Part shown: piece by piece, positions 38,203-48,935 of the stretch | How the letters are laid out: every line of letters starts with the position of its first letter | How positions within the stretch are numbered: position 1 is the stretch's first letter | Assembly: GCA_021613535.1 (NCBI GenBank) | Contig: CP075497.1 | Location: 6,634,001-6,698,000, forward strand | Length of the DNA stretch: 64,000 nt | Direction of reading: 5' to 3' | From: Adineta vaga | Taxonomy: Eukaryota > Animalia > Rotifera | Position numbers and translations under genes: made by a program | Notes under the pieces: generated by a model | Database searches by the model: none | The model's input: only the letters and a program-made list of their open reading frames with translations | What the model was told of the DNA's origin: nothing

Positions 38203-41200
38203 ATGCAATTCAGTCATATTATATTCATATTTGTATTCATCTCTGTCATATACGGTCAAAATACACAAGTAAGAACATATAGCTCTATTTATATATATAT
38301 ATATATGACAAGTTCATCTAGGTGTGATGATAGGGAGGAGTCCGCAGTCGGCTATTTCATTCTCAATAACTCACACTACCTTTCTCTTCTCTTCTCTTCA
38401 CTTCTATGAGTAGTATATAGACACATGCCGAGAAGACATGTTCATAAGTATTTGTCATTGTATGATTATATGATGCATTACTTTCACTTGATTACACCAG
38501 ATGATACCGCAAAGACTCTAGTTTTGTGCATAGTTTATTCACTAAATAGAGAGAAAGAAGAAAGAGGAGTTCTTTGTAATGCTCTGATCTGGAAACAAAA
38601 TGAAAGGAGAAGATCACATGGCAAACGTTTGTTTAAAGACTAAGAGGCCTTCATCCGAGTGATGTTCGCTTTCAATCTGTTCAATGTATGCTTGAGGCGT
38701 TGAAGCTATTAACTATATTACCAACATGTAAATATCGTCTGATGTTCGTATTTTTTTTTTGTCATAGAAAAGCAATATGAAAAAAGTGATTATTATTATT
38801 TTCTCATTAAAGATCTAATGAAGAAAAGAAAACTACCTCAGATATTCTTACACGTATGTTAAAGAGATCTATATGAAGTTAATCACCTTACCGGTAGTAT
38901 GCATTGATAGTTGTACCGCTCATTCAATCGATAATTATAATGAACAAAAGAAAAACGTCGAAAGTAATTCAGACATCTAAAGTAACCACTCGACAACAAT
39001 ATGAATAGTACCACCTTTCGAACCAAACATATTAATCATTAGATCATTTCTTCTATTGTCTCTAGACTTTGATTTTCTATTGAAAAGTTTCGAATAAGAA
39101 ATTAATAACTAAAACAATAGATTCATTGAAGTTTTCTCATTTAATTCCATTTAGTTATGTGAAAAATGTCCTGTTCATTTTGTTATTAATACTTTGGGCA
39201 ATATAAATCAAACTTCATCTGTGACATCACGATGTTTTACGATCGGACAATGTCAGATGACAATAATGACTACTAATGAACATCATATCGTATATTTGAA
39301 ACAAAATGATACGAATCAAATAGTCTTCTCATCAAAAACTGAACTTCTAATTGATTATAATCAAAACAATTCATCCTTAATATTTTCATCCGAATCAAAT
39401 AATCAAATAATCAAACGAACAGAAATCTTTATTAACTATTGTCATAATATTAAAACACTGAGAAAACGCCATACAAAAGACCAATCAACATCTGGTAAAT
39501 AATAAACATTTCTTTTTATTGAATATTCTGTTTTTTCTTCTTCTTAGATTTAGATTCATCAATAATAATTACATTTAATTCATCTGCTTTTATTGATTAT
39601 CATTACCAAGAATTCCTTGATTATCCTTTACGATTGTCTGTACGTTTTCGTACAATCGGACGCATATCGAATGGTGTGTTACTCTCTTTAACACATCGTA
39701 AATCTTCATCATTAATAACTCCATTCATTATCATTGAACATTCAAATGGAAAAGTTGAAATAACAATTCTTCAATTAGATGAAAGAAAAGTCTTATCTAC
39801 TGTAACTGTAAGTCGACCACTTGAAACCAATTGTTCTCCATGTTTTTTTTTCTCTTCCGAAGAAGGAGAAAGTAATATTATACTAGCAATGCGTTCATTC
39901 ATCTTTCTCATCTTCAAACATTTCCGTCCGAAAGACAATGTTAATCTCTTTTCTCATTAATTTCAATGTTCTAACCATTCATGCTTCACTGAACAAGACA
40001 ACACAATGACGATTTGCATTTTTCTCTCCTAGTTCTTATTCCAACCTCTTTTTCTCCTCTATTTCTGTTCTGATTAAGAATCCATCTGACACAAGATACG
40101 GAACAATGAAGAACGAGGACAAGAGGAAAACCCGAATCGAATACTCTAATAATAGTGCTGATGATGATGATATATCTCATCGTAATGATGTGCACACATA
40201 CTTAGAAAGAAAAGAAAAGAAAAGAAATGAAGTGTTATTTTTTCCTGTTGCCAAGGTCCTTGACCATACCTTGAATTGAATAATCGATGATTTCGATAAC
40301 GAGGTTTTTCCTCTTTCTTTTGTAGACAATTCAATGTGGAAAAAATATTAATAATGATAATTGGCATTGGTTACAATTTGAAATTGATCAAAATGGAATT
40401 TTTACGATTGTTGTTGATAATGATAGTCGAACATGTAAAAAGCAACGAAAGATTTCATTCAATTCATTGATTCGTTTTTCTTTTCTAGCACAAATTCCTA
40501 CATACGTTGTATTGAGTTGGAATATTAATGCATTATTAGTTGGAGATACACGTCGATTAAGTTCGGATATCTTTCAACCATTTGTTGGTTATATGAGTGA
40601 TTTAATATTCAATGATGAATATCTATTTCAAGGTTTAACAAAACCTAAACAAGTACGCGTATCAAGATATGATTATGATAATCAACATATTGTTGTTGGT
40701 TATCGTATTGCTTTTTTTAATTTTGTAACAATTGATACTCCAAAATCGTATATTGCCTTTTCGGAACGAGAAAATCAAAACAAAAATCATGGCAAATTGG
40801 ATATTTATTTTCTATTTCGTTCGTATGTACCTGATGGAATAATTTTATATCGTTATGCTCAAGGTTTAAATGAATATTTTGCCATTGGTTTACGTGCTGG
40901 TATTCTTGCTTTATTCATCGATTTTGGTTTTGGTAAACGACAAATTGTGAGTGATGAAACAACAAAATTAGCCGATGGAAAATGGCATGAAGTACGCATA
41001 ACAAGAATTGGAACAGATAAGTATGTAAACTTAATCTTTGAAAGATCAGATAAGTTTTGTCTTTCTTCGGATATTATATATGTAAATATAAGTACATATT
41101 CAGATCCAATTAGTCTTTGAATCCGATCGAAGTACTTTTCATTTACATATTTAAGTGAAAAGAACCATTGACGATCTATCTTAGAATATTCGATTTCTAC

Positions 41201-44200
41201 GGAACTTAGTCTTTTCTTTCTCTTACAATTAGTTACTTGAATGAATTGCATAGGTTTTGATTGATGTTGATTTAAAAATCGTCGTCGTCGTTTTTTTTCA
41301 ATGAGAATATGAAGAGATCTTTGTCGTACTTGAACGAGATAGATGGCAATCTATTTTTATCTGACTTCAAGTGATTTCAAGTTTAAATGACTTTTAGTAA
41401 GTTGAGAATGAATATCTAACTAATCATGTCATCTTCAATCGCTTAAAGAAATTAATATTATACTTTGATAAGTCTTTCCAAAATTGAATCGATAATGATT
41501 CATTGAAATACAATGGGTTTCTTTTTATGATAGGATTGAATTAATAGTTGATAATCGTGTCAATCGTTCGACATTATCAGCAAATGGTATTCGGAATGCT
41601 GTTTCTCTTCAACCAGTTCTCTATGTTGGCGGAATACCAAATAATAATCAAATTAATCTAACAGGATCAGGTTTAAATCCACATGGATTTCAAGGATGTT
41701 TAGCAAGTTTTATCGTTGATGGTCGATTACTTGATTATCAACGAGCATTAGTTTTAAATGGGCAAGTGAAAATGAATGTTTGTTCAGGTAAATTTTTTGT
41801 AAAATAAATTTCTCATTTCTGTCAGAAAAACGTATAATATGAAAGAAAAAGACTGATGACATTGCTATATCTAAATTGATTCCGAAGAATAAATGACCTT
41901 TTCTAGTATTTTCTTCAACTATATCATCTAATGTTAAAACGGGTAAGTTTTTCGTTTGCTTCTTTTAGATATTCTATTCCTTCCCTTGTATAAAAATTCG
42001 TGATTTTTGTCATGCAATCTTTTCCTTCTCCTATTTCATATGTATCCACACTTGTTTACCTTGCACATTTCCCTTATATTTATACTCAATAGTGAATAAA
42101 TTAAAAGAATTTTCTATGATCTATTTAGACTTAAATAAACTTTGTTATGATTTTACTTGCGTTCATTCGGGTATATGTTCAACAAATGATAATGATGGAC
42201 CACGATGTGATTGTCTTGAAACTGCTTATATCGGTGAACGATGTGATAAATGTAACTATAGATATGTTCAATTTGAAATTGATTTTTTTTTCTCTCCAAA
42301 TTCATAGTGCCTAATGGATTTTATTTTGGTAAACATTTTACCAGTGGATCAATTGAATATGTCATGACACAAACACGTCAAACAGAATATGATACAATTT
42401 CGTTTGGTTTACAAACTTTAGCTATGTCTGCACAAATATTTCGTCTTGAATCAGATTTAAATTCCTATAGTCTTGAATATGAAATTGTAAGTAGTTAATA
42501 ATGAATAGATATTCCTTCGATTTTGTATTATGATATGAAATATTTAGTTACGAGGACGTTCTTATATAAAGTTAAATATGGGAGAAAAACAACCAGATGT
42601 TTATTCCAGTATTGTACATGTTACTGATGGAATGTATCATGCTATTAAAATTATTCGACGACTTTCAATAATCGAATTATATGTTGATGGAATTCGAGTG
42701 AAATTAGAAGGAGGAAATAGTATGTTTTTAAAGAATTTGAAAGAGATTGGATTTTACCTTTCTATTTAGAATATGCACGTCAATCAGAACAACAACGATC
42801 ATTTCTTGCACAACGAAGATTACGTATTGGAAGTTTCAAAAATATTTCACAATGGAATGGAATTGTTGCTGGTAAAGTTAAATTCATATACATATATCTA
42901 TTCAAATATTGTCAGAAGTATTGACTTGTTTTGTGCAAAAACTACAGATCTTCATATCTGCAGAGGGAAGATTTTGTTTATTTCCGATAATTAGACAGAT
43001 GTATTTGCTAATATAAAGCTTATAGATATATACTAATGATATTGAGTATCCCAAACTCATCTCTTATCTTCCTGTTAGTATTCGATGTTATTCTCATCTT
43101 AATCATTGACATCGATTGAATTCTCTTTTAGGTTTATCTTTCAATCGTCAGTCAATATTTGATAGTCTTTTCAAAACTCTTGTTCGTTCTGGTGATGTTG
43201 AAGAAGTTCAACCAGATGAACATACTGGTTTATTCAATTTAGTTGAATCTACACATTATCAAACTTTTATGTCATCTTCAACTATGATTTCTACACTTTC
43301 AATTACGAACACTACATATGAAACGACGACTGTCGGCCAAATAAATTCAACGATAGATGGCCCAATTGCGGATAATATCTATCATCAACAATCAATTACA
43401 CAAATGAATAGCATTTCACAAATTCCACATCAAACACCATTCGAATGGATTTATAAGAAATTAACATATTTTGGAGTTCGTGGTCTTCTTATCGGTTCAA
43501 TATTATCCATATGTTTTCTCCTTTTTCTTCTCTTTCTAATTTTACATTTACATTGTAAAACTCGTCATTCAAAAAAGAAAATTTCACAAAAGTATAATCA
43601 AACAAATGGAAGTAAAACTTATTCTCAAATCAAAGGTTATTCCCTATCATCACCGAATAGTCATCCATCGAAAAAACGTGCCCAGAAACTTCTTCGTTTT
43701 CTACATACAAAACAATCGAAACCAACTTCTTTTCGCCTAGCATCAAATGGTAGTATGGCACGTTTAAATAGTGGTGATAGTTATCATCTAATCTCTTCAA
43801 TTCAAGAAAATCGAAAAGATAAAAAGAAAAATTCATCTTATAAAAATTCTCTTAGTACTTCCAATGATAATAATGGTTGTATATATTCAACTCTAGCACA
43901 ACCCATTCCTCCACCTTCCACTTCTTCATCAATCTATCATCAAGTAAATCGTTTGATATCAAATGGTAATGAATCATCAGCTAATCCACCACAATATCAT
44001 TCATCTGTTGTACCACATACAGCTACATTACGTTCATTAAAAAAAGACTTAGATAATTCAAGTGCTCAAACATATTCAGCTGTTTATTCATGTGATTTAG
44101 CAGCTAATCTTGATGTTGAAGAAGAATTTTTCTCATCACATCGATCATCATTAAAACGACGATCCGTTTCCAAAGCACATCCAAATTCTACTGAAATTCA

Positions 44201-45685
44201 AAATCAAATACTTTTTCTCTATGTCAAAAATCTTGTTGATTGTTATGCATTACAACCAAATCATCATCAAACAATTCTTCTTGCAACTGCTGATGAAAAT
44301 CGAATTCAATTATCTCACGTTCGTGTAAGTTAATTCACAGCGAAGTATTAAAGATTTTCTTGTCTCTTTTCGATTCTAGTCCGGTATTTTTCATTCTCAA
44401 CTTCCAATATCATCCGTTGGTGCTTGTCATAACATCTTATTTTCTTATAATGGTCAATATATGATAGGACTTTTCTATGAAGTCACATCAAATGTCAATC
44501 CATATGGTGTTAAAATTTGGTCTACAGATGATTATTCAATTCGTACAAATGTACATCCAATAAAATGTTCTATAGCTAGTACATCTCGACATTCATCAAT
44601 ACTTTATATGGCTGGTAAACAAAAATATGGTCGAGGTATTTCACTTGGACTCCTTGACATCGATTCATGTAGTCTTGCACGTGAATTAAAATCAGATCCT
44701 GATACATCGATTGGTGATGAAATTAAACGAATTATTTTAACAAAAAATGAATTATATGCATTAGTAGCTTGTACTGAATTTACAAGTACATTTACATGTT
44801 TTGTGGTTTTTAAATTAGAAACATCAGCGACATCAGCAATTTTAAATGATGATCAATCATCTTTAATTACAGGAACCATGAGTAATTGTACAATGATCTT
44901 AACACGATTCAATTGTGATCCAAATTTTACATTTGCAATGGTCGATTCCAATAATAATGGTGATCAATATATTCTAACAATATTACGTACAAATGAAATC
45001 ATTATTTGGCAATTAAATGATGGAGAAATTCTATATAGTTATGATTTTAATCATTTACTTCATAATATTGATCCAAATCAAATTATTGATTGTCAAATGA
45101 ATGACAATCGTTTATTAATATTTACCCAACAAGGTTTTATTTATATCTGGGATATTACAATTTCTATTGGACAATTTCTATTAACTACAACTATATGTGA
45201 TCCATTGGTAAATTGCCCTTAAAGTCTAACGATATAAGAAATGACATTGTTCAAGTTTCGGGAAAAGCGAGAGAGATAGTATGACCTTCTTTCAGTAATT
45301 AAATCTTTTATCTTTACCACTATTTTATTTCTTCATATAAAAACATATGTTCTCATAAAACTCTTTCGTTGAAGTGTTCATTAAAAAGTCATTGATCTAA
45401 ATTTTTTTCATTTAGATTCATTCAATTACTTGGTTGGATTATCGACATTTTCTTTCGATTGATACCGATGGCCAACGTATACGTACTTGGAATGTGAAAC
45501 AAAAAGAACCGATTAATGAATCGATTTCTCTTCAAGGTACAATTCAAACGTTACATGTTCATTCCATTACCAATCATTTTAATAATCAAAAAGAATATTT
45601 CATTACGGGTTTATCAGCAAATGAACGAAGTTTAGTTCTCTTTGAATATACGCAATTAAATGATGATCATATTGTTGCTTGTTAG
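38203..45685 (+). CDS. Neurexin-like type I receptor (SP - prodomain-like - LamG - LamG - EGF - LamG - S/T stalk - TM) with a cytoplasmic WD40-like beta-propeller; 13 exons, ~1475 aa
   Basis: Phase-consistent exons: 38203-38268, 39155-39494, 39548-39807, 40326-40434, 40489-41020, 41534-41787, 42129-42251, 42308-42486, 42548-42719, 42770-42871, 43132-44324, 44380-45207, 45416-45685. Motifs NDNWHW, LADGKWHEV, LYVGGIP, GFQGCLAS, CDCLETAYIGERC, VTDGMYHAIKIIR and WNGIVAGLSFN; then VKIWS, IIIWQL, IYIWDI, IRTWNV. Confidence 0.78.
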
Positions 45686-46709
45686 TCATGGCAAGACTTC
45701 GAAAGAAAACTTTTTCACATTGCCATATCTGTGTTTATGTGAAAGAAAATCAATTTTTTTTCTTCTTCTTCATAGACACGTTTTTATGTAGATCAGATAC
45801 ACTTTGTATTTGTTTTGTGGGTTTTTCTTTTCTATTTTTGCTATGAAAATTTTCCTTCGATATCGAATTGTAATAAAAAAACACACTTTGATTTCGAAAT
45901 AACAATTACTAAACTGTTAATTGATCAATTCCACTACGAATAAATCTGTTAAGTCTTTGACAGCTGTCAAACTTATATGCTTTTACACTGCGTAACATCA
46001 GCCAAGATTTAAATATAAACCATTCAACATTGGTATTTGTATTCATTCGAAACAGAAACATAGAAAAATGATGCCAAGGAAGTCTTCGCCTAATGTCTAA
46101 GGGAAATGAATTTTGATTAAGTAATATTTTTCCTGTCTAACGCTTTTCAATTGATCATTACTTCGATACTGATCGTTCACATGTTTTGCATATCGTCGTT
46201 CTAATCAACAAAATATTTTCCGTTCTTCAACCGATTGTAAACGAGATAATTGAGAAGAGAAAGAAATAAAATAGAATAATAAGCTCTGCATATAGTACAG
46301 GTGAGAATACTTGTTACCTTGAGAATAGCTCATCTCAATCATTATATGTTAGTTGATGATCGTGTATATTTTTCATCAAACTACTTTTTTTCCTCTTTCG
46401 TGCATACTTCGCATTCGTGTCTTTTAGACGACAGTATTTTTTCTTTTCTTTCACTTGTCTGTGTAGGCAAATGTTTCGCATGTTTATTATTCTCGTTGTC
46501 GTTGTTCATCGAAATGACAAGTCTAGAATGATTCCTATTTTTCTCTCGTTTTTTTTCTCTATATGAATTCTAATATAATCGTAAAAAAAAGAAATGACAG
46601 AAAAGAGCAGAAACAATTGAGAATAGAAGTTGATGAAATTGCACCAAAAAAACAAAACAGGTTGTAAGTGTATATTATTATTCGTTTTAGTTTTGATTAC
46701 GTTTAATCA

Positions 46710-48935
46710 ATGGCTTCAATTGATCATTTCCAATTGAATTTTCTTACGGATGATCATTATGAAAATATCTCATCAATAACAAATGCAACTGATGACAAAC
46801 AATTGATTGATTTTACTGAATATAATTGGCCTGTTCTATTTCTATCGATCTTAGGAATATTTGGCACATTTGGAAATCTACTTGTTTGTGTTTCAATTAC
46901 ACTCGATAAACAATTACAAACTGTTACTAATTGGTTTCTTTTCTCATTAGCTATTGCTGATTTTCTTGTTAGTCTTATTGTTTTACCATTATCTATTATC
47001 AAAGATTTTTATGGTAAGAATAATAGTAACAACAACAAAAAAAAAAAAAAGAAAATATAAATTGTGTTAAATCTTTTATATTGAACAGATTTAATTAGAT
47101 CTATATTAATTACATTTTCGAAATGAGAGAGAATAAGAAGAAAATCACTTGAGAGTGAATTCAATTATTTGAATAATCAATATTGCATCATTGATAGGTT
47201 AGTGTTAGAGATTGAGAGATGAAATTCTTCGATTAGTTTTAGATCAAGAACAACTTTAATCGTTCTCGGAAAAGAAAACTTCTTCGTAATCTTTTTATTT
47301 TGAATTATGAAATATTTTGTTAGATGATTGTTTATTTCCGATTATAATTCGATATGGAGACATTATTGAACTAATCATGTAATCCTTTCATGCGCAAACC
47401 ATGTTCTCAAGAGATTATTTTTTTTCTTTCATTTAAAATTTTAACTTGTGGGGAAACTTATGCGAGTAGTTTCAAATCTGTTTAAGCTTATCGGATACAT
47501 TTGTAGCAAGAAAAAGAAAATGTTGTCAATCATATTACAAGAAACAAATCAAATTTATTTATGAACATAAGATTATTTCATATTTATATTGTCAATCATT
47601 TCTAAAGCTTTTCCTTTGTTTTTGTTTTAGGTTCATGGCAATTACCAGTTATATTCTGTAATTTATTTGTTTTTTTCGATGTACTCTTATGTACAACTTC
47701 AATTTGGCATTTAACAATTCTTTCGATCGATCGTTTTCTTCATATATCACGACCATTTCGTAGTCGTGAACGAAGTAAACGAAAAACTTTCCTAACAATT
47801 CTTTGTATTTGGACATTTTCCATTGCTATATCATGTATTATACTTATCTTGGGTTTTCTTAATCAAAATAATATTATCATTATCGACACTGAACATCAAC
47901 GTCATTGTGCTTTAAACCATCGTCCATTTATTATTTATGGTTCAATTATTTGTTTTTGTATTCCATGTGTATTAATGCTTGTTACCTATTCGTTAACAAT
48001 TCGACGTTTACATATAGAAGCAGCAAAATGTTACACAGATCCTGATGATCATTTAATGATAAAACCGACAAAATCCGATGGATTAAGACGACATCAATCA
48101 GCATCAAAACGACGTCCATTATCTCAAATTCGAACTAATATCGTTTCAAGGGAAGTATCGAGTGCAACATCAAACTCATTACGAACGCCAGATGACAAAG
48201 CAAATCATCATCAATGGCCGTAAGTTTTTCTGACATTAGCAAAATAGGAAAAACTAATTTTTAATCTTTATGAAATCATATTCGTTGTATCCCCACGAGA
48301 ACGTATTAATATTCTTCCTCCTTTTCCTTTTTTTTATGAAATCAATCATTGTGATAATGATTTTCTTTTAGAATATCCCCAATTGTATCAATTCCAACAT
48401 CCAATATTCAACAACGTTCATTTCTTCATAATACTTTTGTACAAAAAGCTGTTCACGCATTTAAAGGTGGAACAGAAACAACAAGTGAACGTCGTGCAAT
48501 GAAAGTTCTTGGCATTGTTTTCTTCGTTTTTCTTGTTGCTTGGCTTCCATTTTCAATTTTAAATATTCTATCAGCTGTCTGTCCAACCTGTGGTGTACAA
48601 GCATCCTTGCTGAATTTAACAAGTTGGTTTGGTTATATTTCATCAAATTTGAATCCTGTAAAAGAACTTTCTCTACGAAGGAAATTTCACTTTTTTTTCT
48701 TCGGTATTTATTTCAGATTATTTATACGGCATTTAATGTACGATTTCGTCGTGCTTTTGTTTCAATATTAACTTGTCAACCGAATTATTTTTCACAAAAA
48801 CGTAAAGGAAATAATCACTATGTTTTTGTTGCCATCAATAATCAACAGCAGACGACAGCTGATCATGAACAATATTTTTTTCCATCACGTCGTTATGTAA
48901 CTGATCGACGAGCGAAAAGGAAAAGCTTTAATTAA
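46710..48935 (+). CDS. Aminergic class A GPCR, 5-HT2-like, 4 coding exons
   Basis: NWPVL..GNLLVC, TNWFLFSLAIAD, TM3 FDVLLCTTSIWHL..SIDRF (Asp3.32), IYGSIICFCIP, ERRAMKVLGIVFFVFLVAWLPF and WFGYISSNLNP|IIYTAFN. Exons ~46710-47013, 47631-48219, 48372-48657, 48717-48935. Confidence 0.9.

What the first reader, a model, noticed from the sequence alone, without database searches (positions are those of the whole stretch)
38203..45685. Neurexin-like adhesion receptor fused to an intracellular WD40-like beta-propeller
Seen: the ectodomain matches the C-terminal half of alpha-neurexin (LamG-LamG-EGF-LamG, S/T stalk, TM at ~43482-43550). The frame then continues ~620 aa. A 55-nt phase-0 GT-AG intron (44325-44379) and a second intron (45208-45415) join it in frame to a beta-strand-repeat region with WD-like ends (VKIWS, IIIWQL, IYIWDI, IRTWNV). 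Known: neurexins and CASPRs have short tails ending in a PDZ ligand and recruit scaffolds such as CASK in trans. Inference: this is a receptor with its own built-in propeller scaffold, an architecture I do not recognise. The ORF track splits it into many separate ORFs.
Basis: partly seen in the sequence, partly recalled or inferred. Interest (0 to 1): 0.82.

Follow-up and report, generated by a model that had tools for sequence, protein, structure and literature searches.

The report
Rotifer PHRED-1-like receptor with propeller tail
This is a real, spliced and expressed bdelloid rotifer gene for a membrane protein with neurexin-like domains outside the cell and a beta-propeller inside, but the design was already described in 2017 for the flatworm muscle protein PHRED-1, so it is a divergent new member of a known kind.

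Summary
A 13-exon model (38203-45685, 1505 aa, no internal stop) encodes a signal-like N-terminus, LamG-LamG-EGF-LamG, an S/T stalk, one TM (43482-43550), a 260-aa tail and a beta-propeller. The first propeller blade lies in the same exon and frame as the TM. AlphaFold2 and Foldseek give a WD40-type propeller, probably eight-bladed.

The novelty claim does not hold. Adler and Sanchez Alvarado (bioRxiv 10.1101/131789, 2017) described planarian PHRED-1, which has LamG and EGF domains, a TM and intracellular WD40 repeats. Its homologues occur only in lophotrochozoans, and it is needed for muscle-fibre patterning.

The same layout is found across Syndermata: bdelloids, Brachionus, Seison and acanthocephalans. 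Databases auto-name some of these proteins "neurexin".

The window gene is a shortened, fast-evolving paralogue seen only in bdelloids, and its WD signatures are degenerate. A canonical paralogue (6 LamG, EGF repeats, clear WD40) lies about 1 Mb downstream. A classical neurexin ending in -EFYI also exists in the genome.

I could not test direct sequence homology to PHRED-1. The scan had reached the same reading on two other loci of this genome.

The parts
38203..38268 (+). Exon 1: start codon and hydrophobic signal-like peptide (22 codons), GTAAGA donor
   Evidence: Sequence and frame check.
39155..39494 (+). Exon 2: Cys-containing N-terminal region
   Evidence: Open frame with GT/AG bounds. 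Model only.
39548..39807 (+). Exon 3: first half of LamG 1
   Evidence: tblastn of P0071 residues 199-314, 41% identity, E 1.4e-18.
40326..41020 (+). Exon 4: end of LamG 1 and first half of LamG 2
   Evidence: Pfam Laminin_G_2 E 6.5e-13. P0071 residues 309-548 at 56% identity. The 3' end is fixed by RNA joint 41020>41534.
41534..41787 (+). Exon 5: second half of LamG 2
   Evidence: RNA joints on both sides. Pfam Laminin_G_2 E 1.3e-4.
41907..41942 (+). Exon 6: 36-nt micro-exon
   Evidence: RNA joints 41787>41907 and 41942>42129 in run X3. In frame.
42129..42251 (+). Exon 7: EGF-like domain
   Evidence: RNA joints. Weak Pfam EGF hit, E 0.025. Six-Cys pattern visible in the sequence.
42308..42871 (+). 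Exons 8-10 (42308-42486, 42548-42719, 42770-42871): LamG 3, equivalent to neurexin LNS6
   Evidence: All four bounding introns seen as RNA joints. Pfam Laminin_G_2 E 1.3e-4. The orthologue matches neurexin-1-beta LNS6.
43132..44324 (+). Exon 11: S/T stalk, TM (43482-43550), 260-aa cytoplasmic tail with conserved motifs, and the first propeller blade (about 44190-44324)
   Evidence: One open frame. RNA contigs cover 43131-43655 and 43927-44324. The same continuous ORF is present in the C3 ohnologue, in the environmental bdelloid contig L001 and in P0071.
44325..44379 (+). 55-nt phase-0 intron containing the in-frame stop 44331-44333
   Evidence: Skipped in RNA contigs of X1 (side 228 nt) and X2. 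The canonical paralogue has an intron at the same position and phase.
44380..45207 (+). Exon 12: core propeller blades, including the family-invariant motif MAGKQKYGRGISLGLLD...ELKSDP
   Evidence: AF2 pLDDT 81.6, pTM 0.81, all-beta. Foldseek top hits are eIF3i, WDR5 and WDR91. 48 bdelloid-like homologues at 57-86% identity.
45208..45415 (+). 208-nt phase-0 intron
   Evidence: Skipped in contigs of all four runs from two studies. The position is shared with canonical and monogonont-type genes.
45416..45685 (+). Exon 13: last blades and stop codon (TAG 45683-45685). The C-terminus ...HIVAC carries no conserved PDZ ligand.
   Evidence: RNA contigs. Alignment to P0010 and P0071.
45686..45864 (+). 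3' UTR
   Evidence: RNA contigs extend to 45864.

Best explanation
Shown: 38203-45685 is a single expressed gene of a bdelloid rotifer (a 100.8-Mb, 6-chromosome assembly). It encodes a 1505-aa type I membrane protein. The outside part is a truncated alpha-neurexin-like ectodomain (LamG-LamG-EGF-LamG) on an S/T-rich stalk. Then come one TM helix, a roughly 260-aa low-complexity tail with short conserved S/T/Y-rich motifs, and a WD40-type beta-propeller, probably eight-bladed.

Shown: it is the shortened, fast-evolving paralogue, found only in bdelloids, of a gene family present across Syndermata. That family has LamG and/or EGF ectodomains, a TM and a cytoplasmic WD40 domain. Its canonical member (6 LamG, teneurin-type EGF repeats, TM, clear WD40, about 2330-2440 aa) has the same architecture and size as planarian PHRED-1.

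Inferred mechanism: the ectodomain binds an extracellular or cell-surface ligand, as LNS domains do. The covalently attached propeller, rather than a PDZ-ligand tail, recruits cytoplasmic partners. The most likely docking surface is around the motif invariant from bdelloids to Seison and acanthocephalans (MAG-x-Q-K/R-Y/F-G-x-G-I-S...E-L/I-K-S-D).

By analogy with PHRED-1, the family most likely organises muscle-cell contacts and fibres rather than synapses. Whether this divergent paralogue kept that role is unknown.
For: - Single gene: nine GT..AG introns are seen as joints in RNA contigs, including 44325-44379 and 45208-45415. One frame runs through all RNA-bounded exons, and the whole 13-exon model has no internal stop.
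- TM, tail and blade 1 share one exon whose frame is open beyond chance. That frame is conserved in the C3 ohnologue, in L001 and in P0071.
- Propeller: AF2 on the orthologue's domain gives pLDDT 74.9 and pTM 0.76 with about 30 strands. Foldseek top hits are WD40 propellers, many of them eight-bladed (Fbw7, Cdc4, Tako8). The window's own exon 12 gives pLDDT 81.6 and WD40 hits. ESM Atlas matches reach TM 0.62-0.70 to WD40 clusters.
- Family: an exhaustive profile search found only 23 proteins. They include Seison P0059 (12 LamG, TM, WD40), Pomphorhynchus P0053 and single-ORF LamG-TM-WD40 proteins.
- Further members are Brachionus 'neurexin-1a-like' P0087, Neoechinorhynchus P0221 and Rotaria/Adineta models of 2330-2440 aa.
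- The tree separates a bdelloid-only window-type clade (100/100) from a canonical clade that follows the species groups.
- The window's two cytoplasmic introns sit at the same residue and phase as two introns of the canonical paralogue, which has one more in this region.
- PHRED-1's architecture, lophotrochozoan restriction, muscle expression and RNAi phenotype come from bioRxiv 10.1101/131789.
Against: - No PHRED-1 or mollusc, annelid or flatworm homologue sequence could be obtained. None appeared in three searches seeded with rotifer WD40 domains, so orthology to PHRED-1 rests on architecture, size and clade only.
- The window's propeller fails Pfam WD40 thresholds.
- RNA contigs do not cover 43656-43926, and no single molecule spanning TM to propeller was seen.
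- Exons 1-2 and the signal peptide are model only.
- The blade count comes from strand counting and from the kinds of hits, not from inspected coordinates.
- There are no expression-site or binding data for rotifers.
Confidence: 0.78

Rival explanations
1. Convergent fusion: Syndermata joined a WD40 propeller to LamG/EGF receptors independently of the PHRED-1 family of flatworms, molluscs and annelids. The resemblance would then be in architecture only.
For: Searches seeded with bdelloid, acanthocephalan-type and monogonont-type WD40 domains returned only Syndermata proteins. Below those, scores dropped to generic, mostly bacterial WD40 proteins at 20-26% identity. The PHRED-1 paper lists no rotifer homologue.
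Against: - The canonical rotifer protein matches PHRED-1 in domain order, LamG count and size: 6 LamG, EGF repeats, TM, C-terminal WD40; 2330-2440 aa against 2536 aa.
- Rotifers belong to the clade to which the paper restricts the family.
- Two of the three searches were limited by word matching and protein length. The third used the most divergent profile.
Confidence: 0.15
2. Two products: the receptor and the propeller are made as separate proteins, through an internal start or a trans-splice acceptor within or after exon 11. The apparent fusion would come from adjacent or overlapping transcription units.
For: No RNA-contig depth at 43682-43880 in any of four runs. Bdelloids are known to use spliced-leader trans-splicing (my own knowledge, not tested here).
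Against: - The 55-nt intron is cis-spliced, joining 44097-44324 to 44380-44959 in one contig.
- The frame is open and conserved through the uncovered stretch.
- Blade 1 lies upstream of the intron, in the TM exon.
- After 43756 there is no in-frame ATG before 44461, which is inside blade 2.
- Intron-less monogonont-type ORFs encode LamG, TM and WD40 in one reading frame.
Confidence: 0.04
3. Decaying duplicate: the window-type gene is a relaxed, functionless copy whose WD repeats are eroding.
For: A very long branch separates it from the canonical clade. It has lost Pfam-detectable WD40 repeats, and its ectodomain is truncated.
Against: - It is intact and spliced in both ohnologues, and it is expressed.
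- It is retained in Adineta, Rotaria and Didymodactylos, with 80 invariant columns over 276 residues.
- Tail motifs are conserved.
- The AF2 fold is confident.
Confidence: 0.03

Closest known systems
PHRED-1 (Schmidtea mediterranea) and its lophotrochozoan homologues (Adler and Sanchez Alvarado 2017, bioRxiv 10.1101/131789)
   Same: Type I membrane protein with LamG and EGF domains outside, a single TM and a C-terminal intracellular WD40 domain. It is restricted to spiralian animals and described as a divergent neurexin-1 homologue.
   Different: - The window protein is much shorter: 1505 aa against 2536 aa, with 3 LamG and 1 EGF against 6 LamG and 9 EGF.
- Its WD repeats are degenerate.
- It is a second, bdelloid-only paralogue. 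The canonical rotifer paralogue at C6:7.67-7.68 Mb is the better PHRED-1 counterpart.
- Sequence-level homology to PHRED-1 was not testable here.
- No functional data exist for rotifers.
Alpha-neurexin (NRXN1-alpha)
   Same: The ectodomain of the orthologue aligns with the LNS-EGF-LNS C-terminal half of neurexin-1-alpha (E 2.3e-63). The monogonont-type relative P0056 is collinear with residues 375-1216 (E 2.6e-105). Both have an S/T stalk and a single TM.
   Different: The cytoplasmic part is 623 aa with a propeller, against about 55 aa in neurexin. It has no syndecan/neurexin-type tail (no PF01034 hit) and no conserved C-terminal PDZ ligand. The genome has a separate classical neurexin ending in -REFYI.
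Cytoplasmic WD40 propellers on other membrane proteins (for example SCAP; recalled from memory, with a weak Pfam Beta-prop_SCAP hit on P0203)
   Same: A membrane-anchored WD40 propeller facing the cytoplasm and serving as a protein-docking platform.
   Different: SCAP is a polytopic ER/Golgi protein, not a single-pass cell-surface adhesion receptor. No specific sequence relationship was found.

Membership tests
PHRED-1 family | Extracellular LamG plus EGF domains | tested here: met
   Pfam LamG hits on three exon groups and a weak EGF hit. The orthologue has three LamG stretches. Neurexin-1-alpha is the best PDB match.
PHRED-1 family | Single transmembrane helix between the ectodomain and the WD40 domain | tested here: met
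   A 21-residue hydrophobic segment at 43482-43544 followed by basic residues. One TM was found at the same place in P0071, P0056, P0062, P0059, P0054 and P0057.
PHRED-1 family | C-terminal intracellular WD40 domain | tested here: met
   The AF2 models are all-beta and Foldseek hits are WD40 propellers. The domain is collinear with canonical relatives that pass PF00400. The window itself stays below Pfam thresholds.
PHRED-1 family | N-terminal signal peptide | tested here: inconclusive
   Exon 1 encodes a hydrophobic MQFSHIIFIFVFISVIYG-type start. No signal-peptide predictor was available, and exon 1 had no RNA evidence.
PHRED-1 family | Restriction to lophotrochozoan/spiralian animals | tested here: met
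   All specific relatives come from Syndermata or from unlabelled environmental contigs that group with them. That Syndermata are spiralians is my own knowledge.
PHRED-1 family | Sequence homology of the WD40 C-terminus to PHRED-1, with reciprocal best hit | tested here: inconclusive
   No PHRED-1, mollusc, annelid or flatworm member was returned by any search. No PHRED-1 sequence was available by reference, and the paper holds no text supplement.
PHRED-1 family | Expression in muscle and a role in muscle-fibre patterning | not testable with these tools
   Only bulk RNA contigs were available.
Neurexin (classical) | LNS/EGF ectodomain related to neurexin-1-alpha | tested here: met
Neurexin (classical) | Short cytoplasmic tail of syndecan/neurexin type ending in a PDZ ligand (EYYV-like) | tested here: not met
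   No PF01034 hit on exon 11. The cytoplasmic part is 623 aa and ends in ...HIVAC, and the end is not conserved among relatives. The true neurexin-type tail (-REFYI) is on another gene.
WD40 repeat family (PF00400) | Repeats that reach the Pfam gathering score (GH...WD signature) | tested here: not met
   The window exons give only sub-threshold propeller-family hits, E 0.0036-0.045. Canonical relatives pass at 36-56 bits.
WD40 repeat family (PF00400) | Beta-propeller of four-stranded blades | tested here: met

The most novel reading that the evidence does not exclude
The bdelloid-only paralogue is a neofunctionalised receptor. It kept the PHRED-1-type membrane-tethered propeller and the family-invariant MAGKQKYGRGIS...ELKSDP motif. 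It shed half the ectodomain and the WD signatures, and it gained its own conserved tail motifs (SKKR..LLRYLH, SIYHQVNR, TLRSLKKD..SAQTYSAVYSCDLA). This implies a new ligand and partner set specific to bdelloids. Alternatively, the whole Syndermata family may be an independent fusion that converged on the PHRED-1 design.
Probability: 0.2. Interest if true: 0.45.

Novelty: new member of a known kind. Interest (0 to 1): 0.3.

Why it matters
The finding extends the little-studied PHRED-1 design (a neurexin-like adhesion ectodomain wired directly to a cytoplasmic WD40 propeller) to rotifers and acanthocephalans. It shows that bdelloids carry two paralogues of it alongside a classical neurexin.

This gives a natural comparison set for asking what the built-in propeller binds: canonical against degenerate propellers, with one motif invariant across about five lineages. 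It also corrects the database labels 'neurexin' and 'neurexin-1a-like'.

It is not a new kind of system.

Tried and rejected
All searches used single exons by reference, or database orthologues. A script joined the exons only to count length and stops and printed no sequence.
- I first thought the WD40-tailed genes might be the only neurexins of rotifers. A PF01034 scan found three syndecan-type tails far from any LamG cluster. A classical neurexin with a -REFYI end then turned up at C1:6.51 Mb, so I rejected the idea.
- Searching the genome with the P0056 ectodomain gave only weak hits to other LamG genes and was uninformative.
- ESM Atlas feature search on P0087 gave no usable hit. Atlas fold search gave only generic WD40 clusters.
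- Attempts to reach PHRED-1 homologues by sequence failed, and the paper holds no text supplement.
- P0092 ('LRR and WD repeat', Adineta steineri) has the WD40 domain at its N-terminal half. I did not pursue it and did not count it as a family variant.
- My first tail alignment row (44185-44324) was out of frame, so I discarded it and rebuilt the alignment.
- I looked for a second near-identical genomic copy that could explain the RNA loose ends. None exists.
Full report
**What is there**

The region is AT-rich (about 30% GC) eukaryotic DNA with short GT..AG introns. The window is C6:6634001-6698000 of a 100.8-Mb assembly in six contigs. Close relatives of its proteins carry bdelloid rotifer names: Rotaria and Didymodactylos.

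I built a 13-exon model, in window coordinates:
- 38203-38268
- 39155-39494
- 39548-39807
- 40326-41020
- 41534-41787
- 41907-41942
- 42129-42251
- 42308-42486
- 42548-42719
- 42770-42871
- 43132-44324
- 44380-45207
- 45416-45685

The model is 4518 nt (1505 codons plus stop) with no internal stop.

Searches used single exons by reference, or database orthologues. A script joined the exons only to count length and stops and printed no sequence.

**RNA evidence**

I laid contigs of four public runs from two studies on 40100-46050. They are RNA by behaviour, because they skip GT..AG introns.

They show nine joints: 41021-41533, 41788-41906, 41943-42128, 42252-42307, 42487-42547, 42720-42769, 42872-43131, 44325-44379 and 45208-45415.

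- The 55-nt intron is skipped in two runs. One 808-nt contig has 228 nt upstream and 580 nt downstream of it.
- The 208-nt intron is skipped in all four runs.
- Contigs end near 45864.

The weak point is that no contig covers 43656-43926, inside exon 11. That stretch is in frame with both flanks. From the TM to the exon end the frame has 0 stops in 257 codons, against 10 and 26 in the other two frames. None of 20000 shuffles stayed open.

The same continuous ORF, from stalk through TM and tail to the first blade, is present in:
- the ohnologue on C3;
- an environmental bdelloid contig, L001;
- the annotated Didymodactylos protein P0071.

**Domains**

- LamG is found three times, with a weak EGF between the second and third.
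- P0071 (1635 aa, UniRef name 'Neurexin') is collinear with the window from 39556 to 45646.
- Its ectodomain matches neurexin-1-alpha residues 717-1011 and LNS6 (E 2.3e-63).
- The TM is at 43482-43550.
- The cytoplasmic part is 623 aa.
- Its first 260 aa are low-complexity but contain blocks conserved in all four bdelloid sequences: SKK..LLRYLH, S(I/M)YHQVNR, TLRSLKKD..S.QTYSAVYSCDLA and KRRS.
- The end of exon 11 (FLYVKNLVDCYALQP...ILLATADENRIQL) aligns with the first WD blade of canonical relatives. The propeller therefore begins in the same exon as the TM.

**Fold**

- AF2 on the orthologue's domain (P0071:1235-1635, 22-row alignment) gave pLDDT 74.9 and pTM 0.76, with about 30 strands.
- Its Foldseek hits are all WD40 propellers. 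Several are eight-bladed, namely Fbw7, Cdc4 and the designed Tako8.
- The window's own exon 12 gave pLDDT 81.6 and pTM 0.81, with hits to eIF3i, WDR5 and WDR91.
- ESM Atlas matches reach TM 0.62-0.70 to WD40 clusters.
- Pfam does not reach threshold on the window exons, so the repeats are degenerate.

**Relatives**

A word search with exon 12 found 48 fragments at 57-86% identity. Those that carry a source organism name are Rotaria.

An exhaustive profile search of 1.84 billion representatives found only 23 proteins. Beyond the bdelloid type, these have canonical WD40 repeats at the C-terminus, behind one TM and LamG and/or EGF ectodomains:
- Seison nebaliae P0059 (4756 aa, 12 LamG, 3 Fz);
- Pomphorhynchus P0053;
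- P0056 (6 LamG, collinear with neurexin-1-alpha residues 375-1216, E 2.6e-105);
- P0062, a 7.8-kb ORF without introns.

Two further searches added more members:
- Brachionus plicatilis 'neurexin-1a-like isoform X9';
- Neoechinorhynchus agilis;
- Rotaria and Adineta models of 2330-2440 aa with 6 LamG, teneurin-type EGF repeats and WD40.

Below these, scores fall to generic, mostly bacterial WD40 proteins.

In this genome there are four loci:
- the window gene and its C3 ohnologue (70% identity);
- a canonical pair at C6:7.67-7.68 Mb and C3:8.61-8.63 Mb, with LamG exons upstream.

A tree separates a window-type clade that contains only bdelloid sequences (100/100) by a very long branch from the canonical clade. 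In the canonical clade, acanthocephalans, bdelloids, monogonont-type sequences and Seison form their own groups.

The window's two cytoplasmic introns lie at the same residue and phase 0 as two introns of the canonical paralogue (SHVR|SG against IWDAI|NG; CDPL|IH against GHKRE|IT). The canonical gene has one more intron in this region. The cytoplasmic module therefore has one origin within Syndermata.

**Known or new**

A full-text search found Adler and Sanchez Alvarado 2017 (bioRxiv 10.1101/131789).

Planarian PHRED-1 is a 2536-aa protein with a signal sequence, 6 LamG and 9 EGF domains, a TM and intracellular WD40 repeats. Homologues with this combination occur only in lophotrochozoans. It is expressed in muscle, and RNAi thickens and disorganises muscle fibres.

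The authors already call the addition of intracellular WD40 domains the mark of a distinct family. Rotifers are not mentioned.

The architecture is therefore described, and the canonical rotifer paralogue matches it in order, LamG count and size. The window gene is a shortened, divergent second copy.

I could not obtain any PHRED-1-family sequence from flatworms, molluscs or annelids, and none appeared in my searches. Orthology is inferred from architecture and clade, not shown by sequence. The independent-fusion rival keeps about 0.15.

**Not the rotifer's neurexin**

A classical neurexin lies at C1:6.51 Mb. It has a signal peptide and LamG/EGF exons that hit neurexin-1-alpha residues 200-521 (E 1e-44). 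Its last exon carries a TM and a 66-aa tail ending in -REFYI.

**Mechanism (inferred)**

The protein is most likely a cell-surface adhesion or recognition receptor. Its LNS-type ectodomain would engage an external ligand. Its tethered propeller, rather than a PDZ ligand, would recruit cytoplasmic partners.

The motif MAG.Q(K/R)(Y/F)G.GIS...E(L/I)KSD is invariant across all lineages and is the best candidate for the binding surface. By analogy with PHRED-1, a role in muscle-cell organisation is the leading guess (about 0.3).

**Earlier scan notes**

I consulted the earlier scan notes after I had found the paper. They reached the same reading on what appears to be the ohnologue, and on the canonical paralogue. 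They agree with my reading but are not independent evidence.

**Verdict**

This is a new member of a known kind, of modest interest.

Noticed in passing
G000:C1:6508000-6517999 (L014); tail exon at L014:6645-7154: A classical neurexin gene in the same genome. It has a signal peptide and LamG/EGF exons (best PDB match neurexin-1-alpha residues 200-521, E 1e-44). Its last exon carries a TM and a 66-aa tail ending in -REFYI. A likely ohnologue lies at C4:6.477-6.482 Mb.
   Followed up: partly
G000:C6:7672691-7682242 (L005, L011) and C3:8614836-8632797: The canonical PHRED-1-like paralogue pair: LamG exons, EGF repeats, TM and clear WD40 repeats. It lies about 1 Mb downstream of the window gene on the same chromosome. 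Two of its cytoplasmic introns match the window's in position and phase.
   Followed up: partly
window 43656-43926: No RNA contig covers this stretch of exon 11 in any of four runs, although both flanks are covered. It is A-rich, depth is low (3-5x), and the frame is open and conserved.
   Followed up: partly
window 44911, 45512 and 45771: Contigs of three runs from one study fit the window only from or up to these points, then run on into at least 255 nt of unlike sequence. A contig from the other study is contiguous across them. The genome holds no second near-identical copy. They could be chimeric contigs, another strain or rare alternative transcripts.
   Followed up: partly
window 41907-41942: A 36-nt micro-exon between the second LamG and the EGF domain, seen spliced in one RNA contig. 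It may be alternatively spliced, as neurexin splice inserts are.
   Followed up: no
window 46710-47060 onward; L012:2872-3141 (minus strand); L001:12787-14796: A rhodopsin-type GPCR gene (7tm_1) lies directly downstream of the receptor in the window, the C3 ohnologue and an environmental bdelloid contig. In L001 it is followed by Arf and eIF2-beta genes, so synteny is conserved.
   Followed up: no
P0051 (UniParc/MetaClust, 933 aa): This unlabelled EGF-TM-WD40 protein sits next to Neoechinorhynchus agilis in the tree (branch lengths 0.037 and 0.038), so it is probably acanthocephalan.
   Followed up: partly
window 38283-38306: A (TA)n microsatellite just inside the proposed 886-nt first intron.
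   Followed up: no
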